Shown one piece after another: positions 1-29,516 of a stretch of DNA of 33,785 nt. Both the position numbers and the translations under genes were made by a program. Each line of letters begins with the position of its first letter. Positions within the stretch are counted from its first letter, which is position 1. The notes under the pieces are model-generated. The model searched no databases. It was not told the origin of the DNA and was given only the letters and a program-made list of their open reading frames with translations. The stretch comes from Macrostomum lignano (taxonomy: Eukaryota), in NCBI GenBank assembly GCA_002269645.1, contig NIVC01003364.1:1-33785 (forward strand), in the 5' to 3' direction.

Positions 1-368
1 CTGGCTGTTCCCCTTTTACAAATAAAACAAATAAAAGCGATGCACTTCTGCTTCGTCTGGTCTAACGCTTCTTGCAGACCACTAAAATATCATATACTCC
101 AGGAAAGAAGTATAGAAGTATAGTTTTACTACTTGGATTCACAGATATTCAGAACCGATTTGGGTTCTGTAATTGGCAATTTGAAAAGCCTATATAAACT
201 TTGAAAATGGGCAACGAATGAGAAAAGACTGAGAAATTCTCCGGCTCCAACTGACCGTCTATCACATCACTTTGCCGTCTATTGAGTGTACTGAATCTAA
301 CGCATTGCAGCCTTCTTTGACGCTAGTAAAAAGTACTTAATACGAGTATGTTCTCTACAAAATTTCAG

Positions 369-1849
369 GTCGAACTGGTGTTGCCTTGATTTTCACAGAG
401 TATTTATTCGATGCTGTCAGAAACTACCAAACGTTTCTTGAGTACGCAAGCTTTAAAGTACACGTGGACCGCACACGTGGTGACATGAAATCGTTAAGAA
501 AAGCGTTCGATCGTGAGAAAGACCATTTTCAAAAAGACCTCGTAGTTATTGTTGTCGTGCGCCAACGTCATAGCGATGGGGATCTGTGGCGAATAATCCG
601 CGATATTGGTATCGCGAGATCGACAGAAGCTCGCCACAGCATACTGCTTATCTATTGCGAGGTCTATGACACCGAAGAATCTTCTCAGAGGGAGTTACAG
701 GTAGCCCGGCAAGTAGAAAACTTGCCTGACAAGTTCAGCATGGCCTGTTTCTTTGGCAATGAAGAGGAAGTCAAAGAATTTCTTGACTCATTGCTCCAAG
801 ATGCGAGGATGTCAGAAAGCCTGAATGGAATTTCCGTTGTTGGCAGAAATTTTCAAGACGGGCGCACCTCTCAAAGAGAGAACTTCGTGTTCAAGCGTAA
901 TGATGAAATCCCAAAATGGGCAACGGGAAGAGTGATTAAATGGCTAGGCAACTATACTATCAAATCAAGTGTTCAACGATCTACTACTGCGCAGGACGAC
1001 ACCGTTCAGTCAGAAGTTGTAGTTGATGAGTTCCGACTGTCCGAAACGCGGAAGAGATGGCACCCAAAGCTCCCCCCAGCAATCGAATCCACTTCAGAAT
1101 GTGTCAGAGCACCCAGAGCACTCATCGTGCACAATGTTATCTTCAAAGAGAAACTAAGCGCTAGGCTCGGTAGCCAGCATGACTGTCAAAGGCTGACAGA
1201 GAGTCTCCTAAGACTCGGCTACAAGGTCTCGATCAGGTCGAATCTCAACGGAGCTGAAATTAAACACGAAGTTAAGAAGTTTTCCGAAGAGTCTGACGAC
1301 GGCAGGTCATCTGTCGTTGCGTTTATGTCTCACGGACGCCTCGGCGAAGTCTTCGGCTCTGATGAAGAGCCTGTAGGAGAAAAAGATGTATTACAACTTT
1401 TCTCAGATGAATCAGGGACAAAAGACAACTTTCAGCTAGCCATATTTCAGTGCTGTCGTGTTCCAGGTCAATTACCAGACGAGGTGTCGTGTCTGGCCTT
1501 CTACCCGGGTATGATAATCGCTCACTCTACCCTGCCAAATGACTTCAGTCTGCGTGTGAAGAGCAAGGGCAGCCGGTTCATCCAGAGCTTCTGCACAGTG
1601 CTGGATCTTTTTCCTCACAATGACATTGTAACGATCATTCCTCTGGTGAATTACTTAATGCTCAACTCGATTTATCAAGGATTCAGTCAGCAGCCTTGGT
1701 GGTTTGTTCAAAGCGGAAAAAGGTTCTGGCCCAAAGTTCAAGGTGCTGGTGAAAATTCACAAAATCCGTCAGAATGCAACAATGCTTTTGACTTACAGGA
1801 GTTACAAAATAATTATCGAATCAGATCACCAGGATTAGCCTGCAGTTGA
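369..1849 (+). CDS. Caspase-family (peptidase C14) protein 1, 5'-partial: uncharacterised N-terminal alpha/beta domain plus C-terminal caspase domain with intact His/Cys dyad
   Basis: The 487-aa ORF has caspase motifs in order: PRALIVHN (nt ~1112), RLGSQHD, FMSHG (His 1331-1333), AIFQCCR (Cys 1454-1456), MIIAHST, SLR..KGSRFIQSFC. The ORF track start (TTG 386) is not a true start. An acceptor tttcag ends at 368 and the exon opens in phase 1 (xGT-R-T-G-V-A-L-I-F), matching the phase-1 intron position in gene 2. The first exon was not located with confidence. Confidence 0.88.
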
Positions 1850-2217
1850 GGATCGTGGAGCAGCCCCTGTTCCAGGTCATTGATACCCTGTGTGGATCAT
1901 CGGGCAGAGCATGATGATCTTAATGCGGTTGATTCACTAACTTCTAATGGGATTCGTCTGACTGATGACGCTCCTGATGCTCCATATAATTCTAAAAGTT
2001 GTGCTGGAGTGGACAGCCCTATCCAACTGCGTTGAGTATAATTAATTATTAAACGTTGATTAATGCGCAAAAGTAAGAGTAAATTTATTTATACTATAAT
2101 ATAGCACGTTTTTTAATAATTCTCACCCATTGTTAATTGTTGTAATCCAATTATAGGTAAATGTAATACAAATCAGAAATTCTCCATAAAGTACACTGGC
2201 AGATCTAATGAGGGATC

Positions 2218-2719
2218 GAAGCTACTCCGTACGTTGCTTGGTCCACTACACCCCAAGCACAGCAGCACCTGGTACATTAAATAGACTATTTTATTTCAAA
2301 TATTCCCATTCCTACGGACATATTTCTTGCTATGGCTTGCCCCTCTCGGTTGTTCTGCGAACGCGTCCGCGCAAAGTCTAGCTAGATCTCTTTTTGTCTG
2401 TGCTTTTGTCTGCGTCGCGCTATATATATATATGGCTGAGACTCAGACACCGGGTCCTTGGTCGGTTTAGGGGCAGACATAGAAACCGTCCAGCCAAACC
2501 TGTCTAGCTAGAGCACATAAAATTGAAATTGAAATAAAAAATGATTGCAATTGAATAGCCGCGTGTAAGCCGAAGACACAAAAGGGACAAAATGTGTTTA
2601 TTGAATCCTTGTTTTTATTCGCACACTATCTTTTACTCGCTCAACGATTTGCTTCTAACCTCTTTACACATTATCGTTTAGTTCGTGTGGTTGATTAAAA
2701 AACCTGTACATATTTTATT
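2218..2719. repeat. Dispersed repeat, copy 1 (probable non-autonomous transposon fragment, unclassified)
   Basis: Near-identical to 9950-10348 in the same orientation, from gaagctactccgtacgttgcttgg to ctgtacatattttatt. Copy 1 has 100 extra bp (2338-2437). No TSD or TIR recognised. Confidence 0.85.
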
Positions 2720-3507
2720 ATTTATACCGGAAATTTTCAACACATTTTTCTTGAACTAATTTTTAATTTGTATTTAAATCCTTTATACCAAATTTAAGCT
2801 CAGATCGCGTCATAAACTTAGCTAAAAACAATTGTTTAAAATAATTTTCACATTCTTGCTATTTGAGAATTAATCTGACGTCAACTACTTGAAGTAATAA
2901 CGTACGTTCCGCAACTATTGCGATGACTTTTTAATAGAAAGTTTTTACTGCTCAATGTATGAAGCTTAACGTATTTAGTTAATAATTATTAGTACTATTT
3001 TTTTCAGCCAACTATCATTAACAATCCTCGGCTAGCTCTTGATTATGAGTAATTTACAGTTAATTATTTGTGAAGTTCCACTGTCCTGCTGTTTCTGTCG
3101 CTTAACAGTTTTTTTCTAACAATACAGCAAAAAATGCTTCATCATTCACCTCAAACCGTTTCAATTGACTTTCATTTTCTACGAGCAGAAACGTGTTAAA
3201 TAGAAACTAAATTTAGATAGAGATTTAGGTATATTGATTTAGCTGTTTCAAAATGCTAAGACAGTTCGAAGTCAAAAGATAAATCGAGAGCACACAAATC
3301 AACAGTTTTCTAAAATAAAAATCACTCGTAAAATCACTTTATGCACTGTCAGGTAGTTCAGGCAAGTGTTTTGTACTCGTACTGCAAACAGCTAAATTTC
3401 ATAACAATTTGCTACCGAATTTATGCCCCTTTTCAGCGAGAATTTTTCAAAGGCAACTTGAGAGATTTAAAACAAATAAAAACATCCGTTGATTTCTATC
3501 AGAAAAC

Positions 3508-6025
3508 ATGACGAAAGACGCTTCAACTTTTATTGGTAAGGGGTTCGCTTTCTTCATAAATTTTCTATAGCTGACGAAAGATCTATAAAATACGTATACT
3601 TGAATAAACGTTTAAGCCGAAACTTTTAGAACGATCGTATGGCAACCGCCCAAAACGAGACAATTTTTTTAATTTTTACCCTTTCAGATCATCGCCGACT
3701 GCTGCTGGTCTTCGCTGATGAACACAAAGACATGCTGATAAATTATACCGAGTTTATGGAGAGTAAATGCGGATTTTTTAGGAAGACATTTCCCCTCGCA
3801 AACATTTCTGCGGCTTTGCTGAACTCGACAGCGGTCCAGTCATTCAAGTTGTCTGCGCCGTCGTCTGCTCGGAGACATCCGCATGCAACATGGAAGACTT
3901 CCTGAAGCCTCTTATTGCTCGGTTTGGGAAAGATGTCGATCAGCTGCTGCTGTACTGCAGAGTCTGTGATGGCAACCCAAATGAGAAGGATGAAGAATTA
4001 AAAAGTAAATTCAACGCCAGTGGATTCGAATACAAAAATTCGACAATTTCTTACATTGCTGACAGTTCTGACAATATTAGAAAGTTCCTAAGTGACAGCC
4101 TAATCAAACAGAAGACCAAGCAATGGAATGCCGAAACTTGTGCAGCTGATGTTCTTTACAACATTGAGGGTTTTGAAAAATTGTGCGTACAAAAGACAAA
4201 GAATTTTTTGCGACACATCTCGGAACCACATACGTCTGGGCAATCTGGCGCCATTTCATTCGCTGAGCCGTTTACCAATCATATCAACACACAGATCCCG
4301 ACAATTCGTTGATTTATCCTAATAGTCGTGAAACTTTTCCGAAGGCTCTTATCATTTTAAACATCTACCCAGAAAATAATATCAGCAAAGCAATGCTCAC
4401 GGACTGGAAGCGTCTGCTGTGGCTGTTCGACAAACTGCAGTTCAAAGTCACAGATGTGCAAACCGACGCCAGTACTGAGAACGCAGCAGAAACCAGTGTG
4501 AAGAATTTTGCAAACTCTGAATACCATGGAGATTCGTGCGTCTTAGTGATTCTGTCTGAGCGCAAGCTCAGCCAAAACTTTATTCGCAATACCAGCGATT
4601 CTATGGCAGCTGGCGAACAACTCCAGGACAAGCCCAGACTGATCATCCTGCAGCACTGGGAGACCGAACCGCCAAGTGCCGATGGCGCGCCCGCTGGACT
4701 TTCCCAGTTCGTGCCGGCTATTGTTGACTCAATCCGGACCCGCCGCAAACACACAAAGCCTGAAGTGCGAGTTCATCCGCATGGCGGAATGATTTGGTGC
4801 CAGCCGGCTGCTGCAGACTCCGACACTGATGACGGCAGCTCACTAGTTTGGGTGATCTGCGACACCTTCATCAAATATTCAGCCACTGAGGACGTGGTGT
4901 CAATGATTTCGCTGATCAATGAGAAGCTGAAGGCCTCGCCTCCACTGTGGTGTGTGCAGACTACCAAGTATTTCTTCATCACAGACACCAGTCGTCCATT
5001 GAATAACTCACGTGAGTACCTTTTTTGAGCTTATTCAAATTATACTTCGTATTTTATATTCCATAACTTATCTTTCGACTGTGAAATCGTTTTGTCGAAT
5101 TGTGCAGTTGCTCTGTGATTCGGAATTACGTGCATTATTACTAACCAGAACAGGTAGAAAAGAGCAAATGTATTCGTAATTACGTTAAATCAGCCAGCAC
5201 AAAAAGGTAGCACAATAAGCTAATGAGGGTCAGTCGATGGAAAATCTTAAACACTATTTCAGTCTAAAAGCTGCCTCATTCCATCGATAAAATGTCTCTT
5301 AAAAAACCTTTTTCAGTCGAGCCACCTTCCACTAAAGAAAGCGCAAAAGCGGGTCTCGCCTTAATAATAATTACACATTTAAGAACGACTGTACAAATTT
5401 GTAAGAGAAGGAAGCGACATCGATCGTGAAAAATTGAAAAGTACTTTCAAAAAGTTTGGTTACGACACTAAAATTGCGGAGGATCTCAGTGCAGAGAAAG
5501 TTCAATCTGAAGTGAAACAATTTGCCGATGATAGCCGTCACGGTGACACCTGCATTGTGGTCATCATGTCCCACGGAAAACTGGGAAAAATCATTGGAGT
5601 CGATCACTCGGAAGCGTCGGAAACGAAAATCTAAAATACTGAACGATAGCAAAAGCCTTTCAGGAAAGAAAAAACTCGTCATATTTCAGCTATGCCGAGA
5701 TCACCCAGATGGAAGCCCATCGAGCAATTCTGACCATCCCACTCGACTGGTCTACCCGGACATGATCGTGGCGCACTCGACAAGCATAGGTGAAAAAAGC
5801 TTTCGCAGAACAGATCAAGGCAGCCGGTTTGTGAATAGCCTGTGCGATGCTCTTGACAAGTTCGGGAAAGGCTCAGACATCGTCTCGCTCATCAGTGCCA
5901 TCAACTACATTATGATGAGAAGTTTTTACGATAAAACTAGTACAATTAAAGATGACACCCAGCTGCCCTTCTGGCTGGTGCAGACCACGGGCCCTTTTGT
6001 TCTCGCCAATCTTACGGATGGCTGA
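3508..6025 (+). pseudogene. Caspase-family gene 2, frameshifted as assembled (pseudogene or consensus errors): N-terminal alpha/beta domain + inactive caspase domain + catalytically complete caspase domain
   Basis: Exon 1 is 3508-3535 (MTKDASTFI, donor gtaag). Exon 2 is 3688-5011 (acceptor tttcag, donor gtgagt). Exon 3 is 5317-6025 (acceptor tttcag, phase-compatible). The N-terminus aligns to gene 1 (LVFADEHKDMLINYTEFME vs LIFTEYLFDAVRNYQTFLE; QLLLYCRV vs ILLIYCEV). Domain 2 (4309-5011) has PKALIILN, but ILSERK and ILQHWE stand in place of SHG and QACRG. Domain 3 has GLALI, REGSDID, IMSHG (His 5572-5574), IFQLCR (Cys 5693-5695), MIVAHST and GSRFVNSLC. Frame changes are needed at about 3782-3840, 4267-4310, 5365, 5402 and 5630. 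Confidence 0.75.
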
Positions 6026-6439
6026 GAAGTCGCTCGCACTGGTTCCGATAAGGGCTTTGGCATCCGAATAAGGGCAAAATGCATGACAGACACTCGCAGT
6101 GTTAATTTTTTTATTTATATCACTAATTCAATTTTAGCTTCTAAAACATTGTTTTTAAACAATCATAAGCCCTACCGTCAGTAGAATTTTTTTGACATTT
6201 TGCGTTTTTCAGTCGGTGCTTGCGCGATATTTATTGGTTTATAGACGCACAATTTTCTGATTGTTGCAAATTATAGTGCCTCTACTTTTACCATGGCCAA
6301 ATGTGCCAATGGATTGATTCTGTTCTACGCGGCCACCCACATTGAAATAAAAAAATTAAGAAATAAAAAATACCAGGGAGCGGGCACCCTAGCTGCAGTC
6401 ACTGCAAATGTACAAACTTAGATTGCTTCCTTCATCATC

Positions 6440-6640
6440 ACAATCACAATATACTAAATCTTCATCACAATATACTAAATCTCTAAGGTTTGTTTGTTTT
6501 ACCGGTATCACAATATACTAAATTTCTAAGGTTTGTCTGTCTTATACTTTAAATCTCTAAGGTATGTCTGTCTGACCGGTATTCTAGTCTACAGCCTGAA
6601 TGCCTGAACCGTTTTTTTAACATGCTTTATTCAATTGCAA
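6440..6640 (+). mobile_element. Helitron/Helentron-associated (DINE-1/HINE-like) short element fragment with repeated 5' end
   Basis: The motif cacaatatactaaatctctaaggt(t/a)tgt(t/c)tgt recurs 3-4 times. It is followed by tgtctgtctg and gcctgaaccgttttttt, which resembles the microsatellite-plus-core layout of DINE-1-like elements. Class recalled from pattern only. Confidence 0.4.
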
Positions 6641-6984
6641 ATTCTTGTGAGATTTTGTGGATTTAATTGTGAGGCAGAATCCTTATAAACTATGTATATT
6701 ACTTATAACAGTAGTTAAACCCGAGTTTTAATCACAGCCAATCAGAAATTTTCTTCCCCATTTGTTTAAATTCCCCAAACAAATCAAATTCTTTTGTTAT
6801 AATTTTAGTAATTGTTAAAATGCGTCCCACCTTCCCCAAATTTTCTGTATATATGGAATCAGGTTGACGCTAGAAAAATATAACCTCGGCGATCGTCCTC
6901 AATAATTGCCTTTAACTATTCTTGCGAGAATCTTTTAGCGAAACAAATCTAAATTTGGCTAAGACTTATCTCGTTATTTCTTTC

Positions 6985-7110
6985 ATAAGATAGGGAAACC
7001 AGAGGTCGTGGAGACCCAAAACCAGGACTCTAGATAGGGAAAACCAGAGGTCGTGGAGACCCAGAACTTGGGATCTGGTTAGGAAACTTGAGGTCGTGGA
7101 GACCCAAGAA
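6985..7110. repeat. Short local repeat, 3 copies of gaggtcgtggagaccca
   Basis: The 17-mer GAGGTCGTGGAGACCCA occurs three times with variable spacing; the first two are preceded by gatagggaaa(a)cca. Confidence 0.7.
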
Positions 7111-7902
7111 TAGAAACCTGAGTAGGGAGATCGAGATCGTACAGATCCTAAGAAAGCCGTACAGGCCAATAATAGGCATTAGGCATTAAGAGATTAGGTA
7201 TTAGGGAAGTAGATTAGTTACCGCTGGACACCCTTGATCCCTGGAAAACGCTAGACTTTCGGACTGAACTAGTAGGGAATTAGACAGTGTCTTACCGCTC
7301 GGGCACTACACTCTATCGCAAGGTTTCTAGGAAATCGTGTGAAATTAGAAATCTCTAGGAAAGAGTCATAGATTAGGGCTGCCAACGCTACTCAAAGTAG
7401 ATATATTAGTGACAATTTATAGGATAGAGAAATTAGAACTAAAGGACTGCAGCAAATTGGTGAGATAATTTCAGTAGGAACCAGAAGGGCTAGCACAATT
7501 GCATTGAAAAATTCGAATGGGAAAGTGGTTAAATATTCGAAAAACGAGTTTTCCCAATGCTTTCAATCGGAGGCTAGAAAAGGTCAAAATCTCGACTAAC
7601 TGAATAGCAATTCCAATTAAGATTGCGCCACAACTTTTCTCTTTTCACTGTGTAGGCCTCAATACAGGCTGCCGTGTGCAGCGGAGAGGAAAATACACAG
7701 TGGCTGCGTGTGTACATTCTGACCCTGGCTCTGACTCCATAGAAAATTGCTATTTATAGATCTCACTCAACTGTGCATTGGCTCTGCCTGCATACAACCT
7801 GTGCACACTGAGCAAGCCTATCACTGCTATGAACATGTATTTGACTGCAGTGCCGAAGCATATATGGCAGATTTTTGTGCTCTCCGATCAGTAGGTGGAA
7901 TA

Positions 7903-7973
7903 GCCGAGGTGTAGGCACTAGGATTAGGTTTAGTCTCGGCATAAGGTCCAAGGTTCGAGTCTGCCTCCTCGGC
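7903..7973 (+). other. tRNA-like segment (pseudo-tRNA or SINE head)
   Basis: 71 nt bounded by a perfect 7-bp stem GCCGAGG/CCTCGGC, with a B-box-like GGTTCGAGTC at the T-loop position. D, anticodon and T stems do not pair well, so it is not a functional tRNA. Confidence 0.35.
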
Positions 7974-8470
7974 GGATGATTAAAATCAAATAAATTTATT
8001 CATATATAGCTTGGACCTCAACTAATTGGAATATTTTTTGTTGAATTAGCAAAGCAAAGCCAGCTACAGTGAGAGGCCTGCAAGTTAATGCATTGAAATT
8101 AAAAACCAAGCCAATGCCCAGGACTAATTGAATAGCGACACCCGCCCCTCAATTTCAATATCAAAAATGTGTTGCGCAACCTTTCAACGCTTGTAGCTCT
8201 CCACGCGAGTGTAGAGAACCAATGCTATAGTTGGCACTGAGTTATGATGCAATACAATTGCATCGACAGTCAGAATGCTTCTCAATCAAAAAGAAACTGT
8301 TTGAACTTTAAAAAACGGGGCAAAAAATCGAGTTTTTCGAATATTTAATCCCGAAAAAATTAAGCATTCCTTTGCAAAAATTTGTGTACCAGCGCTCCAT
8401 AAATACGCATCGAATGCAGAAAACCCCACAAAATTCTGACTACGCAGAGTCAAGTTAAACGAAGGTTCCT

Positions 8471-8471
<1 letters not shown>

Positions 8472-8502
<31 letters not shown>

Positions 8503-8556
8503 GTAGGTAGGTAAGTAGGTAGGTAGGTAGGTAGGTAGGTAGGTAGTTAGGTAGAT
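8472..8556. repeat. Compound microsatellite (TAGA)n-(TAGG)n
   Basis: Read directly: a TAGA run switches to a TAGG run at about 8500. Confidence 0.95.
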
Positions 8557-8929: not shown

Positions 8930-9760
8930 CAGTTTGGCACCACTCCCACCCTGATAAGCACACCACTCCCACCTTGATTAGCACCACTCCCATCTGATTA
9001 GCACTCTCCTCACAGATTAGCACTGCTCCCACCGGGATTAATATCCACTCCCTCAGATTACCCCCACTCCATACATTAGCACCAATCCTCCAGATTAACA
9101 CTACTCCCCATATTAGCCCCAATTCTCCTATATTTGTCCCACTGTTAGATTAGCCCCACTTCTTCAGATTTGCACTACTTCCATAAGATTAGCACCAGAT
9201 TATCACCACTCCTCCAGATTAGCCTCCCTCCCCAGATTAGCACTGCTCCCCAGATTAGGACCGCTCCCCAGATTAGCACCGCTCCCCAGATTAGCACCGC
9301 TCCTCAGATTAGCACCGCTCACCAGATTAGCACCGCTCCCCAGATTAGCACCGCTCCTCAGATTAGCACCGCTCACCAGATTAGCACCGCTCCTCAGATT
9401 AGCACCGCTCCTAAGATCAGCACCGCTCCCCAGATCAACACCGCTCCCCAGATTAGCACCGCTCACCAGATTTAGCACCGCTTCCAGATTAGCACCGCTC
9501 ACCAGATTAGCACCGCTCCTAAGATCAGCACCGCTCCCCAGATTAGCACCGCTCCCCAGATTAGCACCGCTCACCAGATTAGCACCGCTCCTAAGATCAA
9601 CACCGCTCCCCAGATTAGCACCGCTCACCAGATTAGCACCGCTCACCAGATTAGCACCGCTCACCAGATTAGCACCGCTCACCAGATCAGCACTATTTCC
9701 CCCCAGATTAGCACCATACATTAGCACCACTAGCCCAGATTAGTCCCACTCTTCCAGATT
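8930..9760. repeat. 18-bp minisatellite, unit CAGATTAGCACCGCTC(C/A/T)C, with degenerate flanks
   Basis: About 25 well-conserved units in the core (~9229-9700). It accounts for the QISTAP-repeat and SGANLx-repeat ORFs in the track. Confidence 0.95.
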
Positions 9761-9949
9761 AGTAATAAATACCTGAGTAGTAGCACATACTCACAACAGA
9801 CTTGCACTGCTTTAGAAGATTAATGCAGTCCCAGAATAATATCATTAAATGAACATTTCAAAAAATCTGCATCAATCTGCATGGGAGGAGACATCATTAT
9901 TGCCACGAGTTAAGAGAAAAACTTTATGCCTCACTGCAGACTGGATATA

Positions 9950-10348
9950 GAAGCTACTCCGTACGTTGCTTGGTCTCTCCACCCCAAGCACAGCAGCCTG
10001 GTACATTGAATAGACTATTTTATTTCAAATATTCCCATTCCTACGGCCATATTTTTTGCCATGGCTGAGACTCAGACACCGGGTCCTTGGTCGGTTTAGG
10101 GGCAGGCATAGAAACCGTCCAGCCAAACCGTCTAGCTAGAGCACATAAAATTGAAATTGAAATAAAAAATGATTGCAATTGAATAGCCGCGTGTAAGCCG
10201 AAAACACAAAAGGGACAAAATGTGTTTATTGAATCCTTGTTTTTTATTCGCACAATATCTTTCACAACGCTCGACGATTTGCTTCTACTTCTTTACACAT
10301 TTATCGTTTAGTTCGTGTGGTTGATAAAAATACTGTACATATTTTATT
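9950..10348. repeat. Dispersed repeat, copy 2 (paralogue of 2218-2719)
   Basis: Direct-orientation match to copy 1, lacking the 100-bp segment between the two ATGGCT motifs. Confidence 0.85.
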
Positions 10349-11015
10349 GTTCCATGATTTATGATTTGTAGATTTCCTGGAAAGAAAGAGTAGATTCTTA
10401 GAATTTAAGGAAAGAGAGGGCAGAATCGGAGGGAGAGCGGTTTCTTAGAACTCAGACAGAGAGAATTCTGGGTGGTAAGAGGCGGATTCGAAAAGAAGAA
10501 GTTGAAAAAGAATCGGATGGTAGATGATAGAAAATAAATAAAGTATATTCTTTCTCAATATGCCAAAAATTAGTGTAGGTGTGTCATGCCGTGTTATGCA
10601 TCTGTGATGAAGAAACAGTCAGAAGCAACTCGAATCATAAAATTCGAGTAAAAATTAACAACCAGTTACCGTTGCGTATAGGCAGCATCTATACGCTGAG
10701 TGTTTACCCTCTATATTTAATTTTCATGTGCACTCATTTTTATGACAAATCCACTGCAGTTCTCATGAATAAGAGATGATTCAGTGATTCAGTGATGGTG
10801 CGATCAGCGGGACATTATGGTACTCAGTGGGAACTCGAAGTAATTATAGCTGCAGCCAATACTCGTACCTGCTCCGATGAATATAGAAATTGGGAGCGTT
10901 GAAGACCCAGTTGATTTACACGAACTGTGGGCGGTGTTATTACGATTATTGATTCCGCTTTTAGTATGAAATCTTCTCACTGAAAAGTGCATCACGCAGC
11001 GTTCTTTTAAATTGC

Positions 11016-12234
<1,219 letters not shown>

Positions 12235-13982: not shown

Positions 13983-16900
13983 TCAATGCTCGTTTAAATC
14001 GCCCAGTAGCTGGCCAACATCCTCTCGGACGCCATCCTTGATGTCCTTGGCGGCGTCGAGACCCCGACGAACCGCGGCCGAGGCCGACTCTCTGAGATCG
14101 TCGCCGCTGTCGTCTTCTCCGCCGGATGAGGAGCCGAAAAATCGAATCAGAAGGCGGTTCACCTGATCCGGGGCGTCCTGCTGCACCCAGTGGCTGGCCT
14201 GGGGCACCAGCTGGAACTCCATCTGACTGCAGTACTTGCCTGCATGTTATGGGAGTGGCGATTGATCGAAGCTATTCAAAAAGATACCAACTTGGGAAGC
14301 GCACTAGTTGGGAACCCGGCGATTTAGAAACCTACTATTTAGAAACCCTACTAAAAAATTTAGGAAATCTACCATTTAGAAACCATGAGACATGACTTAT
14401 ATGTTACTCGTAGGCACCCTACTATTAGGTAGGAACCCTACCATACTATTTAAGAACCACAAAGTTTAGGAACCCTATCATTCAGGAACCATACAATTTA
14501 GGAACCCTACAATTTAGGAACCCTACAATTTAGGAACCCTACAATTTAGGAACCCTACCATTCAGGAACCCTACCATTCAGGAACCCTACCATTCAGGAA
14601 CCCTACCATTCAGGAACCCTACCATTCAGGAACCCTACCATTCAGGAACCCTACCATTCAGGAACCCTACCATTCAGGAACCCTACCATTCAGGAACCCT
14701 ACCATTCAGGAACCCTACCATTCAGGAACCCTACCATTCAGGAACCCTACCATTCAGGAACCCTATCATTCAGGAACCCTACCATTCAGGAACCCTACCA
14801 TTCAGGAACCCTACCATTCAGGAACAATACAAGATTGGAAACTAGAAAAACCGTAACAGAGTTAAAGGACATACGGGCACTGCAATAAGCAACTGTCTTT
14901 ATTCGAAACTCACTAGACAATTTAGCCACTTCCTGCGTGATGTACTTATCGTTGGCGCCAAACACCAGCATGGTTGGCACTGTAAGCTGCTTCCTGCTGC
15001 CGCCTTCGGCGCCCCGGCTAGGATAGCGGAACGCGGCCCGGTAAAAGTTAATGGGTCCAGTTAGAGCCGTAGCCGACGAGAAGGTGTACTTGAAAGCGTC
15101 CAATTCCTGCTGGTTAACAACGCCTTTCAAAGCGATGTCCATCGAGACGAGATCTTGACGAGTAATGAGCCATTCCGGAAAGCAAGGCAGCTGGAAGAAG
15201 AACATGTACCAAGACTTGAGGAACTGGGTCAGATTCGAGCGAATGTAGGTCTGGAATGCCACGGGATGTGGGCAGTTGAGTACGGCCAGTTTGGTGACCA
15301 TGCCCGGGTGAGCCATGGCGAACGACCAGACAACTGCACCGCCCCAGTCGTGACCAGCCAAGTAGCACTTGTCGTAGCCTGGTGTTGGTGAAATAATTTT
15401 TTTTCTTACCTGGTATCTAGTTTACGATTACTCAATCATAACTCTTATAATTACTGCATTGCTGCCCATTCCGCCGACTCCCCTAAGCAGGCACACAAGC
15501 GCGCGGATACGTAAGCAGTCAAACGCACAGGAGTGTACAGCGGCCCCGACTTTATTTTTTGGGAAGGCCTGTACACTTCACTGCGCCTTGGGGGTTGGCC
15601 CTCAAGGATGTCAACTGCACGAGCAGAGCAAATCCGAGATTCCAATTTAGCCCCAAAATTAATGCAACTACACTTGGAATCGAGCCTGGGCCGCTGGTCC
15701 ATATGTGCGCCAGGATAAACCACTAGTCCTCTCCCAAATCATCACAACTATGATTGTAAAACTCAACAGCCTACCAGTAAATCACAGCCTTTGTTCAAAG
15801 TGAAATATTAAGCTACAGGAAACGCAAATCTTACCCAAAGCGTTAATAGCCTGTCGGATATCTTCAACCAGTTTTTCAATTCGATAATTCACAACGCCGC
15901 GCGGCTTGTCGCTGTCGCCGTAGCCGCGCATGTCTATGGCCACAATCCTGTGGGCGAGGCGAGAATTGACAAGATCAAGATCTGGACACTACCATTTCGC
16001 TAACCCCTGAGCAAACACACGCTCACACAGGGTGTGCGCTTCTTAGTACTCTTAGTAAACTACTGTTAGTAGCTCGTAATGTGCTGCATGTGCAGGTTTA
16101 TTTTAATTGATTTAAAATTTCACTAACCTGTAGTTCTCAGCCAGATCGCTGTCAAGCTGATGGCGCCAGCTGAACCAGAACTCTGGGAAGCCGTGCACCA
16201 GCAGTAGGAGGGGTTTCCGGGGATCGCCATTCTCAATGCAGTGCAGCGTGATGTCCTGTTAAGTAAAGTTAAACAGATACATGCAAGTGGAGCAGGTTAA
16301 GACGTTAAAACATTACAACAAAGCAGTTTCATTAGTCATTATGGGGACGCCATTTTCATTTTGAGTGGGTTCCAGCAAATAAGTGTCAAGTAGCGCCAAG
16401 GGCCAAGGCGATACTGTAAGGTGGCGCCAAGGCTATGCTGTAAGGTGGCGCCAAGGCTATACTGTAAGGTGGCGCCAAGGCTATGCTGTAAGGTGGCGCC
16501 AAGGCTATGTTGTAAGGTGGCAACAAGGCTATACTGTAAGGTGGCGCCAAGGCTATGTTGCAAGGTGGCACCAAGGCTATACTGTAAGGTGGCGCCAAGG
16601 CTATGTTGTAAGGTGGCGCCAAGGCTATACTGTAAGGTGGCGCCAAGGCTATGTTGTAAGGTGGCGCCAAGGCTATACTGTAAGGTGGCGCCAAGGCTAT
16701 GTTGTAAGGTGGCGCCAAGGCTATACTGTAAGGTGGCGCCAAGGCTATACTGTAAGGTGGCGCCAAGGCTATGTTGTAAGGTGGCGCCAAGGCTATACTG
16801 TAAGGTGGCGCCAAGGCTATGTTGTAAGGTGGCGCCAAGGCTATACTGTAAGGTGGCGCCAAGGCTATGTTGTAAGGTGGCGCCAAGGCTATACTGTAAG

Positions 16901-19900
16901 GTGGCGCCAAGGCTATACTGTAAGGTGGCGCCAAGGCTATACTGTAAGGTGGCGCCAAGGCTATACTGTAAGGTGGCGGTGGCGCCAAGGCTATGTTGTA
17001 AGGTGGCGCCAAGGCTATACTGTAAGGTAGCGCCAAGGCTATGTTGTAAGGTGGCGCCAATGCTATGTTGTAAGGTGGCGCCAAGGCTATACTGTAAGGT
17101 GGCGCCAAGGCTATGTTGTAAGGTGGCGCCAATGCTATGTTGTAAGGTGGCGCCAAGGCTATACTGTAAGGTGGCGCCAAGGCTATACTGTAAGGTGGCG
17201 CCAAGGCTATACTGTAAGGTGGCGCCAAGGCTATGCTGTAAGGTGGCGCCAAGGCTATACTGTAAGGTGGCGCCAAGGCTATACTATAAGGTGGCGCTAA
17301 ATACTTTCGCTAGCCGATTTTGCGGGTGAAGATTCAAAGTCGCTTTTTTTCAAAAAGCTCGATGTTCACGAGCAGAATGCATGACTGCACTTGGAGGTAG
17401 GGATTCCAAAATCCCGACATTTTACAATCCCGGGATTGAATAGTCCCGAAATCCCGATGCTGTTGAAATCCCGGGATTCAAAATCCCGGAATCCCGGTGC
17501 TTTTGCAATCCCGGGATTAAAAATCCCGGGATTCGATTCCCAAAAAAATCCCGGGATTCAAATCCCGGATTTTTGGCCCCAATCCCGGGATCCCGGGATC
17601 CCGGGATTGAAATCCCTAAATTGCTAGACGGACTGTGCGGCGTGCCGCGTGCAGTAGTCATGGTCTCGCGACTCTCAGAGTCTCAGGGCCTTTTCATATT
17701 ACCAATTCCAGAACCAGAATCGGTTCGGAATTCGAAGAAAAACAGCAGTATAACTATTAAACTCTGTTAATATTTAACTGCCTTAACAGCCTCACTTAGC
17801 ACAATTTTTCACTTTCTTCTTGGCGACTGTCATTCAATAATAAAAACTTTATAGCACGTATCTCCCTCTAGTTATGGAGACAAAAAGTTTATACTTCACA
17901 AATTGGTTCTTGTTCTGGAACCAGAGCAAGCAATATGAAAAGGCCCTCAGTCTCGTCTCGTGGTAGAAAACGAAAAAAAGTTAAAATTATCTATAATTTA
18001 CAGTTCACATTAACAATTTTTAGCTCAATTAGGACAGGAGCTTTGCAAATGTTTAACGTTTCATTGAGAAACAGCAAAAACAAATAAATGTTTTATTATT
18101 CAAATAAACGTTTAGACTTTAAATTATCTAATTTAGGCATTGAAAGGTCGTTCTAATCCCGGACCAATCCCGGGATTAAGGCCTTGAAATCCCGGGATCC
18201 CGATCCCGGTCTTTTGCAATCCCGGGATTAAAAATCCCGGGATTCGATTCCCAAAAAAATCCCGGGATTCAAATCCCGGATTTTTGGCCCCAATCCCGGG
18301 ATCCCGGGATCCCGGGATCCCGGGATTGGAATCCCTACTTGGAGGGGCTTGTGTTGTGCTGCGTGATAGAATTGCATCCACGAGTGTCCACTTTTGACTT
18401 CTATCATATTATCTTAACTAACCAATCGACTGAAACAGTCTAGTCAAAGTCCGACTGTAATAAAACTTCACTTAGTAAACAAACTTTGAACGCGACGCTC
18501 AAGTGACGCCCATGTCTCAGTGTGCAGTGTTTAGTTAATCAAAAATACAAGTCCCAGCTGATAAGGCGGGGTCAGCTTTTAATCAGTCAACAGTGGCACT
18601 TGTTTTGCGAGTGAATCAAGTCAAACCCAGTCAGCCCAGGCACGCAGCAAAGCAGTGCTAAACTACAAAGTTCAAACAATCCAATTCCAGACAGATAACA
18701 GATAAGGCGCCTGGCCGCTAGTCTGGACACGAAGACAAGACAAAACAAGTCACTATAATGTCACACACGCTTGGGTCTCATAGTGGGGTCAAAGCTTCAA
18801 GGTCTAGTTTTGGAATGGACTTATTGAAAATACCAGTACAGTCCAGCCCAATGGAATTGGTTGGCAAAAATTTCCTACAATGTATCAAAGCATTCAAACT
18901 GTTGAAATAAAAAAGATCTCAACTTTGATCTTAGCTATATGCATGATTTATCAAGTCCATTATTAGTCTGAGAAACTTGGACTTTGATAACCTAGTTAAT
19001 TGTCATACCAGAGATATACTTAGATAAGAAATTGTACAAATAGATTTATATATATATTTCTCAAAAAAGTACATTTACATTGGATCATAATATTATTCAA
19101 GAGGCTTTACTTAATTAATTTAAATGCTATAAAAATGGGTTGTCTATATTTATGTACATATTTATGTATGTAGCTGTGTGATCAATTGGAGAAAAAATGG
19201 CTCAACCAATTTTCTTCAAACTTGCACCATTTAATCAGAAATTTTCCTGTGATGGTACATACATTTAAATGCTAAAAAACATCACTTTTTTGGTATCCTA
19301 ATTGCTTTTTGGTGCCTAAGTTAAAAATAAAACCTTCATTCTAGCATTTGACTGCAATGATCTAATCTATAAACAAAAACATTTATTTTGTTAAGCTAAT
19401 ATGCTTATATTAAATTTTGAAAAGTCTTCAATTTGAAATAAGATATTAGCTATATACAGTATATGGCTATACAGACCCTAGATTCTCAAATCTATTATAC
19501 TATAGTGACTTCCCTACACTTTATTTTCAGTTTTATGCTAGAAAAACTAATTTACTTGCAATATATGCACTAGACTCGGACTAGGAAGGTTTTTCCACAA
19601 TAAAGGACCTTTTTGCAGTATAACAATAAAGGACATTTTTGTGTTGCGATGTAAAGGATCCTTTCTTGTATTATGATATTTCAATCTTTTGAATGCCAAT
19701 AGCTACACCATACGATAGCTCTGTGGGATTGTTCCATATGCTAGATGCTAGATTGTATGCCAACCCTTTTATGTCTATTTTGTTTTCTAGAATTTTCTAG
19801 TGTATATATAAGATTTGCCTGATTTTGAAGTAGGGCAAAGGCCATATAGTAGAAACTTAAAAGATAAAAAATGAAACATTTTTATTAAAATTATGAATGG

Positions 19901-26074: not shown

Positions 26075-29000
26075 ATGGATTACTTAGAGGCGCTTCTGTC
26101 AAAAAAGTTAAAAAACCTATCTAATCTGATCAAGACCGACAGTATTAGCCAAGTGAATCAGGCGCGGTACCAAGGCAACGGCCTTGTTCACGTAGCTGCC
26201 GCCAGCTCCGACCCGGAACTGACGCGGCTTGCCATCCAGGCCGGGCTGGACCTGGAAGTGCGAAACGACGAAGACATGACGGCTGTTCACGTCGCGGTTG
26301 CTAGCGGCAATGCCGAAGCGCTGAAGCTGCTGCTGCAGGCCGCAGCGGACCCGAACGCTGTCTACGGCAGAACCGGCTGGGGTCCCCTGCACCTAGCAGT
26401 TCGATCCGCCTCGACTGCCGCCTCCGTACAACTGGAGATGCTGCGCCTTCTGATGAAGAGCGGCGCCGATGCCAGTCTGACAGATGCGGACGGCAACACG
26501 CCGCTGCACCTGGCGGTGGAGGCCAACGCCGACAAGCGAGTCGTTGCTCAACTAGCTGACGCAATGGAGAATCGAGTCTCATTGAGAAACCTTCGCAGCC
26601 TGACGCCACTGGAATATGCAGCCATGAACGGCAATCGAAAAGCGATTCAGCAGCTGGTGAAGCGAGGCGCAGTGCCGCAGATTCGACTGCTGAACCGGTT
26701 TGGCTATATTGCCTACGTTGAGGTGTTTCTGGAGATCACCATCAACAAGTTGAGCACTGACTCTGTGGCCACTCTGCTCAGGCACCCGGATTTTCAGGCG
26801 CTGATTAACTACATTGTCTCCTACAAGATCAATGAACCCAATCGGCGCGATGCTCAGAGTGGTCAGTCGACAATTCTGAGCGATTTGGTTAATTCTCGGT
26901 ACAACGGTTTGGGCACCTTCAAGAGCCTGCTATTGAACAATATCAATACAAGATTCGCAAATTACCTATCTGACAATGCCAAGGCTAGATCAGCCTGGGC
27001 TGACCTGGTTATAACCTACGTCCTATTCAGAGAATCCGTATCCCTGATAAGGATGCTAATTGAGGACAAGCTTCTGTTCTTTCTAACTGACGCTGCAATC
27101 CAAGGCCAGCTGCACAATCTGTACAAAGGCAAGTTCAATCGCTACCTACCAAGCTCTTTGTCTCAGAGCTTCGTAGCGGACGATGGAGCTAGTAAGCAGC
27201 AGATTGAGCAGATGCTGCGTCGTTGGCTAAAAAGCAAATCCGGTATCTGTTTGATGAAATTCGGTTTCCCTAGCGAGGAAGCAGTCTCTATTGGTACTAG
27301 GCAGGTGTTTCGAGCGCCAGCCTTTAGCTTGATGACCTGGGCGACTGCGTCCGGTCGCTATCACCTGTTGCCCTATCTTTTCATAGCCGAAGACACGGAC
27401 AATATACCTCTCGGACTGTTCAGCATGGCGCTGCTCAATCGTCTTATGCAGGCGCGCAGCTCTGTCGGCACTCTATTCAGCCAGGATGCGGAGTACTATC
27501 GATTAGAGCTCGAAGTTCTCATACACTATCTCATATCCCGGATGTGGCACTTAGACAAGTCGCACGAGAAGTCCAACTCGGCGCTGTTCCAACTGCAACA
27601 GCTGCCCGTGTATGGCGGGGCCAGCATGCTAGACATGACTATGCAAGTTCGATCGTTGAAACTGCTCCAGTTTTCTAGCACTATCAGCGCTATGAGCCTA
27701 CTGTGGTATCGCGGCCTGTCTTGGATGTCAAGCTCTCACCGGTTCCTGTTTATAGCTTCATCATTAGGCCTCTGGTTTGTGCTGCTGATTCCGGTAATTG
27801 TGCCGACGTTGGAACGGCTGATTCCAGCGCGGTCGCCCGGCTTACAGTTCCTTAGAGTCGGCCTCCTGCTGTGTCTAGCGTTCATCAATCTTCTGATCGG
27901 GCTGGGCCTAGCTGGGCGCTACACCCTTCGAAGAATTGAGAAATTTCGACGAAAAGCATCAGCAGCCGAGAAGGAGCAACGACAAAAATTTGGCAGCCTC
28001 CTGCTCACTGGAGCGCCCGGCCAACGATGGCAGTTCGACGTCATGGCCGGGGACGCGCCGACGTCGAGCGCCGACTCCGTGCTGGAGTTTCTACGCACCC
28101 CAGCAGTGAAATACCTGGCCTTCTTGCTCACGTACTTAGCCTATGCGCTATTAGGTTTATGGATTGGCACGCGAAGCTTCCGGTACATCATTTCCGACGC
28201 AGAAATCGTCTATTGGATCTTCTTCTTCGGTTTCCTATTGGAGAACGGGCAGCAGTTTGTCCGCGCAAAATTATTTGGCAGTTGTTTCTATCGGCAGTCA
28301 ATCTTCTGGGCCATAGTGTCGGTGCTTACCTACCTGTTCGGCTTGACAGCGTTCATCTGGCGAATGGTTTACCACACTGCTCACCAATTCGAAAACAGGA
28401 CTGCGACTTCGTTTGAAGCGCGCGAAGTTGCCGACTCAACTTTCCTGGGCGTTCGCTATCTATTCGTGCTGTCCCATTCGCTAATGTTTATGCAACTCTG
28501 GCGATTCTTTTCCTCGAGGCCGTGCATCGGGCTGCTAATCCGCATGATTGAAAAACTGATTAGATACTACTTGTGCCAGTTTGTGCTGCTCATGCTGCTG
28601 GTCATGATTCGAGGAGCGTTTATCTTTGGCAGTATTTTGTATCCGCAGGTTAGTACACTCGCAGCTACCCTTGAAAAAGTTGATTTTCAAGTAGACAGGC
28701 CAGTGAGACGATGCATCGAACAGAATTAATTAGTTTCCTTGTGCACTTAAATGGATTCTTCAGTATACGGTGATGCACTCATTTGCTAGCATGAATTTAA
28801 ACTTGAAGTTTGAAAATTTAAATTGCGTATCAAGCAGGATAAAACTCGTAATTCTTGTGTGCAAATAAATGAAAGCAAAATTTGAAAAAAAAACTTTTCA
28901 GGGCTACGCAATGCACGCCAATAATGGCACGGTCACCCAGATGTCCACTCCGATCTACTTTCTAAGAGTGTTCGTGCACTCGTACTACTCAATAATGGGT

Positions 29001-29516
29001 GAATTCCTGTCAGACTATCTGAGTGGATTCGAATGCCAAGGCGACTCGATCTGTCCGGCAACTTACCTGGGCAGCTTTTTGGTTACAGTATTTCACATGT
29101 CCGGATACGCCTTCTACACCACTCTGCTGCTGCTTGGACTTCTCATCTCCTTGGTTACCATCATTGTTGACGAGCTCAACCGGAATCACATCGCTCACTG
29201 GCAGATTGCTCGGTACAACTTTGTGCAAGAGTTGAACTACTATTCTCTGCTTTATCCACCATTCAATGTGCTGCACATCTTAATTGAATGGATCGCCATG
29301 GCGAACGACTGGAAAGCCGTAGCTCAACTGTACGACCTCGGCCAGGGTTTCTACAGCCAGTCCAGCCTGATCAACAACCTGCTCAGTCAGGCGTATGTTT
29401 TGGAGCGAGATCGAGATCGAATGCTAGCCGAGATCGAGCAACGGCGAGAGCACCGGAACAAAACCAAGATTGATACTGGAAACAGTGGACTGCATCGTTG
29501 GCGTTGCTGCTTCTAG
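26075..29516 (+). CDS. TRP cation channel: 5 N-terminal ankyrin repeats on a TRPM/TRPS-type (MHR4 + 6TM + TRP box + coiled coil) body, ~1062 aa, 2 exons
   Basis: Exon 1 is 26075-28648 (donor gttagt) and exon 2 is 28902-29516 (acceptor ttttcag), joined in phase 0. There are five ankyrin repeats (LVHVAA, TAVHVAV, GPLHLAV, TPLHLAV, TPLEYAA). These are followed by an MHR4-like segment (LMTWATASGR...YGGASMLDM...LLWYRGL), S1 FLRTPAVKYLAFLLTY, pore YYSIMGE with a Cys pair (CQGDSIC), S6 LLLLGLLISLV, TRP box WQIARY, LLYPPF and a charged C-terminal coil. An in-frame acceptor at 26043-26044 means an upstream exon is possible. Confidence 0.9.

What the first reader, a model, noticed from the sequence alone, without database searches (positions are those of the whole stretch)
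369..6025. Tandem pair of multi-domain caspase genes built from repeated caspase folds
Seen: two adjacent same-strand genes share an N-terminal domain and a phase-1 intron at the same aligned position. Gene 1 is [N-domain]-[caspase with SHG/QCCR]; gene 2 is [N-domain]-[dead caspase]-[caspase with SHG/QLCR]. Neither has a recognisable CARD, DED or death domain. Established: animal initiator caspases usually use death-fold prodomains and are activated by dimerisation. Inference: this may be a lineage-specific family in which caspase-fold domains themselves serve as the pro-domain or dimerisation module, a candidate undescribed cell-death or immune protease module.
Basis: partly seen in the sequence, partly recalled or inferred. 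Interest (0 to 1): 0.78.

Follow-up and report, generated by a model that had tools for sequence, protein, structure and literature searches.

The report
Flatworm caspases with caspase-derived prodomains
This stretch of Macrostomum lignano (flatworm) DNA holds the last exon of one caspase gene and a frame-broken neighbour, both from a species-restricted family whose prodomain is made of dead caspase-like modules, a layout already described in coral caspase-X and mammalian caspase-16.

Summary
The window is Macrostomum lignano DNA, about 99% identical to NIVC01000988.1.

- **Gene 1 (369-1849)** is only the last exon of a larger gene. Upstream exons, outside the window, encode a further N-domain and a dead caspase. 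The full layout is N-A / dead caspase / N-B / active caspase.
- **Gene 2 (3508-6025)** is N-A / dead caspase / active caspase. It has lost N-B, and in this window its frame is broken at five places. It is probably a pseudogene, though assembly error is not excluded.
- **The N-domain** is an orphan, matching only five cluster representatives, all M. lignano, among 1.84 billion. Three weak but agreeing tests suggest a degenerate caspase-like fold.
- **Origin:** the dead domains are closest to the family's own active domains. Each N-plus-caspase unit starts at the same phase-1 intron, so the layout arose by internal duplication of that unit.
- **Active domains:** they resemble CED-3 and caspase-3 and keep the catalytic dyad and the aspartate pocket.
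- **Precedent:** a dead caspase domain ahead of an active one is published for coral caspase-X (functionally tested), mammalian caspase-16 and mussels.

This is a new, independent variant of a known kind. Regulation in cis by the dead domain is inference.

The parts
1..368 (+). 3' end of the long (about 2.1 kb) intron of gene 1, ending in acceptor AG 367-368
   Evidence: P0001's upstream exons map to L001 10001-10984, 11145-11188 and about 11312-11340. All lie before L001 13090, which corresponds to window position 1.
369..1849 (+). Gene 1, last exon (enters in phase 1; stop TGA 1847-1849). It encodes N-B plus a linker plus the active caspase and matches residues 350-829 of P0001 (BOX15_Mlig007987g1).
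   Evidence: tblastn gives 98% identity. The ORF is listed and the homology search is.
371..865 (+). N-B domain of gene 1: an orphan alpha/beta domain, probably a degenerate caspase-like fold. It has no His and keeps a Cys in LLIYCEV (644-664).
1109..1750 (+). Active caspase domain of gene 1. SHG is at 1328-1336 and QCCR at 1448-1459, with the catalytic Cys at 1454-1456.
   Evidence: Pfam Peptidase_C14 E 1.4e-30. The family's active-domain profile gives CED-3 and caspase-3 as the best PDB relatives, E 5e-39 to 1e-35.
2215..2719 (.). Dispersed repeat in the spacer between the two genes. A second copy lies at 9947-10348.
   Evidence: Self-BLAST gives 92-95% identity.
3508..3535 (+). Gene 2, exon 1 (ATG plus 8 codons, ends in phase 1; donor GT 3536-3537)
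   Evidence: Read directly from the sequence.
3688..5011 (+). Gene 2, exon 2: N-A domain (3690 to about 4174), linker, and dead caspase domain (4342-5008). The frame shifts near 3810 (-1) and near 4297 (-1). The exon ends in phase 1, with donor GT at 5012-5013.
   Evidence: With L001's variants the region is colinear with P0007 residues 49-490 at 43% identity.
5317..6025 (+). Gene 2, exon 3: active-type caspase domain. SHG is at 5569-5577, QLCR at 5687-5698, and the stop at 6023-6025. The frame shifts near 5367 (-1), 5390-5391 (+2) and 5630 (-2).
   Evidence: The annotated L001 counterpart is P0011, only 325 aa.

Best explanation
The region belongs to a Macrostomum lignano-restricted family of CED-3/caspase-3-like cysteine proteases. 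Their long prodomain is built from caspase-derived modules rather than from CARD or DED.

The building block is one exon that starts at a fixed phase-1 intron. It encodes an N-domain (about 150 aa, probably a stripped-down caspase-like alpha/beta fold without the catalytic His) followed by a caspase domain. A two-domain member of this kind still exists (P0009). Duplication of that unit inside a gene gave N-A / caspase / N-B / caspase. The first caspase domain then lost both His and Cys and became a pseudo-caspase.

The window holds the second unit exon of one such gene (gene 1: N-B plus active caspase). It also holds a neighbouring paralogue (gene 2) that has lost N-B and, in this copy, carries five frameshifts. 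Gene 2 is most likely a decaying duplicate.

Inferred, not shown: the active domain cuts after Asp. The pseudo-caspase pairs with it in cis through the usual caspase dimer interface and sets its activity, as cFLIP(L) does with procaspase-8 and as the dead domain does in coral caspase-X.
For: - **Species and copies:** searches identify M. lignano. Window 1-8528 is 98.8-98.9% identical to L001.
- **Four-domain layout:** P0007 (1017 aa) carries all four domains. Its two unit exons are separated by only 73 nt. P0001, P0002 and P0004 agree.
- **Conserved gene order:** the tandem order is the same in a paralogous block, L002.
- **Same phase-1 boundary before every N-domain:**
- **Dead domain:** it lacks His and Cys but is well conserved, with 59% mean column identity. 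hhalign against the active domain gives E 1.8e-29.
- **Duplication within the lineage:** the dead domains score 25-79 bits against the family's active domains, best against P0009. They score 16-32 bits against five unrelated caspases and human caspase-3.
- **Active domain:** the best PDB matches are CED-3 and caspase-3. The alignment keeps the Arg, SHG, QxCR and Arg...GSxFIQ positions.
- **N-domain as a caspase-like fold:**
  - hhalign score 38.7, E 2.5e-5, in register from column 1.
  - None of 200 block shuffles reached that score.
  - The best natural PDB sequence hit is an insect caspase, in register, at E 0.08.
  - The AF2 model has pLDDT 70.5 and pTM 0.70. Its highest TM-scores are to caspase-3 (0.59) and caspase-4 (0.58), against 0.27-0.53 for every other listed hit.
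- **Gene 2 decay:**
  - There are five private frameshifts here and three different ones in L001.
  - Its indel density matches flanking non-coding DNA.
  - Six of its seven substitutions are non-synonymous.
  - The N-B domain is missing.
- **Functional precedent:** PMC4715348.
Against: - No transcript data were seen here. The joins between exons rest on public gene models, and two annotations disagree for the L002 gene (P0003 at 318 aa versus P0002 at 738 aa).
- The N-domain's link to caspases is weak. hhalign probability is only 75%, the comparison with the dead domain is not significant, and Foldseek E-values are about 3e-3, with response regulators ranked alongside.
- The whole-protein model has pTM 0.36, so it says nothing about cis pairing.
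- None of the eight frameshifts is shared by the two copies. That also fits long-read assembly error, and the contrast with gene 1 is only P = 0.09.
- Gene 1's seven differences from L001 are all non-synonymous, so its own constraint is uncertain.
Confidence: 0.65

Rival explanations
1. Gene 2 is a working gene. The frameshifts in this window, and the three different ones in L001, are indel errors of a long-read assembly of a duplicated genome.
For: No frameshift is shared by the two 99%-identical copies. Choosing the open variant at each site gives an intact 687-aa reading frame that is colinear with P0007. A gene model exists at the L001 copy (P0011).
Against: - Most of the indels are not in homopolymers and several are complex, for example TG loss plus a substitution.
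- Gene 1, next door, has no frameshift within its domains.
- Gene 2's indel density equals that of non-coding flanks.
- Six of its seven substitutions are non-synonymous, and it has lost a whole domain.
Confidence: 0.3
2. The N-domain is not caspase-derived. It is a TIR-like or other flavodoxin-like signalling domain fused to caspases.
For: UniRef names P0008, which carries N-domains, a 'TIR domain-containing protein'. Foldseek ranks CheY-type receivers at similar E-values. TIR, CheY and caspase folds share the same parallel strand order (my own knowledge).
Against: - No Pfam TIR family matches at E up to 10.
- No TIR appears among the PDB sequence hits or the 50 listed Foldseek hits.
- The caspases have the highest TM-scores.
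- The profile comparison with the caspase domain is in register and beats 200 block shuffles.
Confidence: 0.2
3. Gene 1 in the window is a stand-alone two-domain gene (N plus caspase). It would be made by spliced-leader trans-splicing at the 368 acceptor, and the longer public models would be fusions of neighbouring genes.
For: A two-domain member exists (P0009). The upstream intron is long, about 2.1 kb. NCBI splits the equivalent gene in L002. M. lignano uses trans-splicing (my own knowledge).
Against: - P0007 joins the same two units across a 73-nt intron.
- The upstream unit exon of gene 2 ends in phase 1, matching the phase-1 acceptor.
- Two independent annotations join the units (P0001, P0002).
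- The first in-frame ATG after the acceptor (484-486) would remove the first third of N-B.
Confidence: 0.15

Closest known systems
Acropora caspase-X (AmCaspase Xa-Xd; Moya et al. 2016, PMC4715348)
   Same: One polypeptide carries an N-terminal caspase domain lacking the catalytic His and Cys, followed by a typical active caspase domain. There is no death-fold prodomain. The family is expanded within its lineage. One Acropora digitifera prediction even has four caspase domains.
   Different: The flatworm family very likely arose independently. Its dead domains are closest to its own active domains and share the family-specific C-terminal motif P-x-W-x-[VI]-Q-T. It also carries the orphan N-domains, which the caspase-X description read here does not mention. 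No functional data exist for it. Orthology to the coral clade was not tested.
Mammalian caspase-16 (Eckhart et al. 2025, PMC12198278)
   Same: The prodomain arose by duplication of caspase-domain exons and lost the catalytic site. Some copies are pseudogenes through frameshifts, as in human and mouse.
   Different: Caspase-16 is a mammal-specific lineage. It has one pseudo-domain, not up to three extra modules.
cFLIP(L) with procaspase-8
   Same: A pseudo-caspase domain acts as partner for an active caspase domain. This is the mechanistic model proposed here.
   Different: cFLIP acts in trans and is recruited through tandem DEDs. No DED is present here. Cis pairing in the flatworm proteins is not shown.
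CED-3 / caspase-3 (MEROPS C14A)
   Same: These are the closest solved relatives of the active domains. The dyad and the S1-pocket residues align.
   Different: There is no CARD. The residue after QxCR is V, D, P or I rather than G. The intersubunit linker is short. The C-terminal strand motif is specific to this family.

Membership tests
Caspase family (Pfam Peptidase_C14, MEROPS C14A) | Sequence match above the curated Pfam threshold | tested here: met
   Gene 1 scores 107 bits against a cut-off of 21.4. The gene 2 dead domain scores 29.5 bits and the two pieces of the gene 2 third domain score 45.9 and 49.9 bits.
Caspase family (Pfam Peptidase_C14, MEROPS C14A) | Catalytic His (SHG) and Cys (QxCR) dyad | tested here: met
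   Met in gene 1's active domain and in gene 2's third domain. Not met in the dead domains or the N-domains.
Caspase family (Pfam Peptidase_C14, MEROPS C14A) | Asp-binding S1 pocket residues (Arg179, Gln283, Arg341 in caspase-1 numbering) | tested here: met
   The profile alignment to CED-3 keeps R in vRlgsqiD, Q in QaCR and R in sfRvkskGsrfiq.
Caspase family (Pfam Peptidase_C14, MEROPS C14A) | Cleavage after Asp by the expressed protein | not testable with these tools
   This needs recombinant enzyme and peptide substrates.
Double-domain caspases of the coral caspase-X type | An inactive caspase domain (no His, no Cys) N-terminal to an active one in the same polypeptide | tested here: met
   P0001, P0002, P0007 and frame-corrected gene 2 all show it. 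Within the window it is seen only in gene 2, and only after frame correction.
Double-domain caspases of the coral caspase-X type | Common descent with the coral clade | not tested
   No coral sequences were at hand. The dead domains are closer to the family's own active domains than to five unrelated caspases and human caspase-3, which points to an independent duplication.
Double-domain caspases of the coral caspase-X type | The dead domain regulates the active domain | not testable with these tools
   The whole-protein AF2 model has pTM 0.36, so it gives no information on domain packing.
Death-fold initiator caspases and cFLIP (CARD or DED prodomain) | A CARD, DED or death domain N-terminal to the caspase domain | tested here: not met
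   No such Pfam family was found at E up to 10 in gene 1's N region or five paralogues, nor at E up to 1 in gene 1's product or the gene 2 pieces.
TIR domain (considered for the N-domain) | A match to TIR profiles or to TIR structures | tested here: not met
   There is no Pfam TIR hit at E up to 10 and no TIR among the PDB sequence hits or the 50 listed Foldseek hits. Only UniRef's automatic name for P0008 suggests TIR.
Caspase-like fold (considered for the N-domain) | Significant profile or structural similarity to caspase domains, in register | tested here: inconclusive
   - hhalign gives 75% probability, E 2.5e-5 and score 38.7, above all 200 block shuffles.
- The PDB profile hit to an insect caspase has E 0.08.
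- Foldseek gives TM 0.58-0.59 at E about 3e-3 to 2e-2.
- The three results agree, but each is weak on its own.

The most novel reading that the evidence does not exclude
The N-domains are true caspase-fold relics. The full proteins would then string four caspase-fold modules on one chain (two degenerate, one dead, one active). These would fold back on each other into a self-contained pseudo-oligomer, giving a caspase that needs neither a death-fold adaptor nor a partner molecule for activation.
Probability: 0.2. Interest if true: 0.6.

Novelty: new variant of a known kind. Interest (0 to 1): 0.42.

Why it matters
If the models hold, flatworms arrived independently at the same solution as corals and mammals: a dead caspase domain used as the prodomain of a live one. 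That strengthens the view that pseudo-caspase partnering is a recurrent way to control caspases without CARD or DED adaptors.

The family also offers an extreme case, with up to four caspase-derived modules, in a laboratory flatworm that can be genetically manipulated. A 2024 survey of lophotrochozoan caspases reported only a kinase-prodomain oddity in this species (PMC11463336), so these genes appear to have been overlooked.

The practical value is modest until expression and activity are shown.

Tried and rejected
- **Homology searches.** The word-indexed searches returned almost only M. lignano proteins, so no deep alignment could be built for structure prediction.
- **Exhaustive N-domain search.** The profile search found five cluster representatives, all M. 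lignano. No outgroup is therefore available.
- **Whole-protein AF2 model of P0001.** It gave pTM 0.36 and no usable domain arrangement. The tool returns no coordinates or PAE, so cis pairing could not be examined.
- **TIR reading of the N-domain.** I considered it because of a UniRef name, but Pfam, PDB sequence search and Foldseek gave no support.
- **N-domain versus dead caspase.** The profile comparison is not significant.
- **Single-column shuffles in the hhalign control.** One of 100 gave an outlying score of 137.8, which I treat as unreliable. The block shuffles are the control I rely on.
- **Literature search by locus tag.** It found nothing.
- **Other caspase-like sequence in the window.** tblastn found none outside 362-6010.
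Full report
**Source and setting**

The window is eukaryotic DNA. The 492-aa product of the ORF at 369-1849 is 98% identical to a Macrostomum lignano protein, P0001 (BOX15_Mlig007987g1, 838 aa). Every other significant relative is from the same flatworm.

P0001's contig, NIVC01000988.1 in assembly GCA_002269645.1, was fetched as L001. Window 1-8528 aligns to L001 13090-21640 at 98.8-98.9% identity. L001 is therefore a sister copy of this locus: an allele, a homeologue or a recent duplicate.

**Gene 1 is only a last exon**

Window 369-1849 follows acceptor AG 367-368 in phase 1. It corresponds to P0001 residues 350-829.

In L001, P0001's first 328 residues map to 10001-10984. Two mini-exons lie at 11145-11188 and about 11312-11340. 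All of these are upstream of the point where the window begins. Window 1-368 is therefore intron.

A second public model, P0004, extends the same gene further upstream with another N-type domain at L001 9558-9905. The full gene reads N-A / dead caspase / N-B / active caspase. The window holds only N-B (371 to about 865), a linker, and the active domain (1109-1750). The motifs MSHG and QCCR are confirmed.

**Gene 2 is present but frame-broken**

The gene model, read from the sequence, is:

| Feature | Coordinates | Note |
|---|---|---|
| Exon 1 | 3508-3535 | ATG plus 8 codons, ends in phase 1 |
| Intron 1 | 3536-3687 | |
| Exon 2 | 3688-5011 | ends in phase 1 |
| Intron 2 | 5012-5316 | |
| Exon 3 | 5317-6025 | |

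Homology runs through three reading frames in exon 2: frame 0 to 3809, frame 2 from 3812 to about 4296, and frame 1 from 4306. It also runs through all three frames in exon 3, with three frame changes.

A base-by-base comparison with L001 places the breaks near 3810 (-1), 4297 (-1), 5367 (-1), 5390-5391 (+2) and 5630 (-2). L001 is open at all five of these sites. It carries three other frameshifts where the window is open, at window positions 4618, 4755 and 5933. Its annotated product, P0011, is only 325 aa.

Taking the open variant at each site gives a 687-aa protein. It is colinear with the intact paralogue P0007 over N-A plus dead caspase (43% identity) and over the active domain (38% identity). 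It lacks P0007 residues 491-763, which hold the N-B domain and its linkers.

As assembled, translation from the ATG stops at 3903-3905.

**Pseudogene or assembly error?**

- Most of the indels are not in homopolymers, and some are complex.
- Gene 2 has 8 frameshifting events in 2061 coding bases. The non-coding flanks have 14 events in 2758 bases, which is not different (P = 0.67).
- Gene 1 has one frameshift, 13 codons from its stop, plus one in-frame 3-base indel. The contrast between gene 1 and gene 2 gives P = 0.09.
- Six of the seven substitutions in gene 2 are non-synonymous.
- Together with the lost domain, I favour a decaying duplicate (about 0.6-0.7). Assembly error is not excluded, because no lesion is shared by the two copies.

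**The dead and the active caspase domains**

The dead domains of gene 2, P0001, P0002 and P0007 align well, with 59% mean column identity. In them SHG is replaced by LS-E, LSLSNG, LSQTQ or LS-EG. QxCR is replaced by QHWE, NEWQ, HEWD or QEYQ. They are clearly caspase domains: hhalign against the active domains gives E 1.8e-29, and the best PDB relative is CED-3 at E 9e-11.

The active-domain profile is closest to CED-3 (E 5e-39) and caspase-3 (about 1e-35). The alignment keeps the pocket Arg, SHG, QxCR and the Arg...GSxFIQ segment. Cleavage after Asp is therefore the expected specificity, by inference.

Both dead and active domains end in the family-specific motif P-x-W-x-[VI]-Q-[TS]-x-[KG]-x-F. 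In BLASTP the dead domains score 25-79 bits against the family's own active domains. The best partner is the active domain of P0009, a two-domain member with the layout N plus caspase. The dead domain therefore arose by duplication within this lineage.

**The N-domain**

Pfam finds nothing in it, even at E up to 10. An exhaustive profile search of 1.84 billion cluster representatives found five proteins, all from M. lignano. Two of them show two matched stretches each.

Three independent and individually weak tests point to a degenerate caspase-like fold:

- **Profile comparison.** hhalign of eight N-domains against the active domains gives 75% probability, E 2.5e-5 and score 38.7. Without realignment it runs in register from column 1 of both domains (N 1-102 against caspase 1-124). 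It places the N-domain's [FY]C[RE]V motif on QxCR. Reversed profiles score 13, and none of 200 block shuffles exceeds 31.5.
- **PDB sequence search.** The best natural hit is Spodoptera caspase-1, aligned from the first strand, at E 0.08.
- **Structure.** An AF2 model of N-B (pLDDT 70.5, pTM 0.70) has the element order beta-alpha repeated five times. Its highest TM-scores in the PDB are to caspase-3 (0.59, rmsd 3.5 A) and caspase-4 (0.58). All other listed hits score 0.27-0.53, with CheY receivers and flavodoxins at 0.33-0.47. All E-values are only about 3e-3 or worse.

In the whole-protein model, N-B repeats the caspase element order through beta5 and alpha4 but lacks alpha5 and beta6. The catalytic His is absent. 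A Cys aligned with the catalytic one is kept in seven of eight N-domains.

UniRef calls one member (P0008) a TIR-domain protein. I found no TIR support.

**How the architecture arose**

Every N-domain is preceded by a phase-1 intron at the same residue:

| Domain | Boundary |
|---|---|
| Gene 1 N-B | G\|RTGVALIF |
| Gene 2 N-A | D\|HRRLLLVF |
| L001 N-A | x\|VSRLALIL |
| P0007, both unit exons | A\|HQRLLLVF and N\|RPGVALIL |

In P0007 the two unit exons are residues 48-542 and 540-1017, and only 73 nt separate them. This leaves no room for a separate gene. Gene 2's dead-caspase exon also ends in phase 1.

The simplest history has four steps:

1. An exon encoding N plus caspase existed, as in P0009.
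2. It duplicated in tandem inside a gene.
3. The upstream caspase copy lost its catalytic residues.
4. The whole four-domain gene then duplicated in tandem.

A paralogous block on NIVC01000896.1 (L002) has the same order: a P0002-type gene followed by P0007. Gene 2 of the window is the degenerate counterpart of P0007.

**Mechanism**

Shown here: the domain content, the loss of the catalytic residues, and conservation of the dead domain.

Inferred: the dead domain pairs in cis with the active one across the beta6 dimer interface and tunes its activity. For coral caspase-X, removing the dead domain increased killing of HeLa cells. A model of that protein resembled the cFLIP/procaspase-8 heterodimer (PMC4715348).

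My whole-protein AF2 model has pTM 0.36 and cannot test this. The role of the N-domains is unknown. They may be further interaction modules.

**What is known already**

- Caspases with a dead caspase domain ahead of an active one are described in Acropora (PMC4715348).
- Mammalian caspase-16 has a prodomain derived from duplicated caspase exons, and its human and mouse copies are pseudogenes (PMC12198278).
- Four Mytilus caspases have two CASc domains (PMC10967218).
- A 2024 survey of lophotrochozoan caspases reports, for M. lignano, only a kinase-like prodomain. It states that no other unexpected prodomain was detected in platyhelminths (PMC11463336).
- The flatworm proteins sit in public databases as hypothetical or caspase p20 domain-containing proteins. 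No paper in the library cites their locus tags.

**Verdict**

The gene models needed correction, and the concept already has published precedents.

This is an independent, more elaborate variant of a known kind. One member here is cut by the window and the other is probably dead. Interest is moderate.

Noticed in passing
window 565-665 (gene 1, N-B domain): All seven base substitutions between the window and the sister copy L001 within gene 1's coding sequence are non-synonymous (Q>H, W>L, R>G, A>T, I>T, Y>H, Y>H). They cluster within 100 bases, between strands 3 and 4 of N-B. The cause could be relaxed constraint, diversifying selection or a gene-conversion tract.
   Followed up: partly
window 1810 and 878-880: A 1-base indel 13 codons before gene 1's stop gives the window copy and L001 different C-terminal tails (...LQNNYRIRSPGLACS versus ...LQKIIESDHQD). 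A 3-base in-frame indel also removes one Glu in L001.
   Followed up: no
window 2215-2719 and 9947-10348: A dispersed repeat of about 400-500 bp (92-95% identity) lies in the spacer between the two caspase genes. A second copy sits about 7.7 kb downstream.
   Followed up: no
window 11016-12212: A 1.2-kb (AGTT)n microsatellite of about 300 copies explains the extreme GC skew there. A similar array lies at the start of L001, upstream of gene 1.
   Followed up: no
window 8976-9716, 14468-14825, 16402-17297: There are three minisatellite arrays with periods of 18, 16 and 24 bp and 22-41 copies each. They account for the long repetitive ORFs listed on both strands.
   Followed up: no
window 26075-28729 and 28869-29516 (+): A long ORF of 884 aa has N-terminal ankyrin repeats (Pfam Ank_2, E 4.5e-23) and a hydrophobic C-terminal half. 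A 215-aa ORF follows it. This looks like an ankyrin-repeat membrane protein, possibly of the TRP-channel type.
   Followed up: partly
window 14795-15361 (-): An exon-like ORF shows a weak alpha/beta-hydrolase match (Abhydrolase_1, E 1.8e-4, below the Pfam cut-off). Its 3' end, at the low-coordinate side, overlaps the 16-bp repeat array.
   Followed up: no
P0008 (UniRef100_A0A1I8GM93), a paralogue elsewhere in the genome: UniRef labels this N-domain-bearing protein a 'TIR domain-containing protein'. None of my searches reproduced a TIR match.
   Followed up: partly
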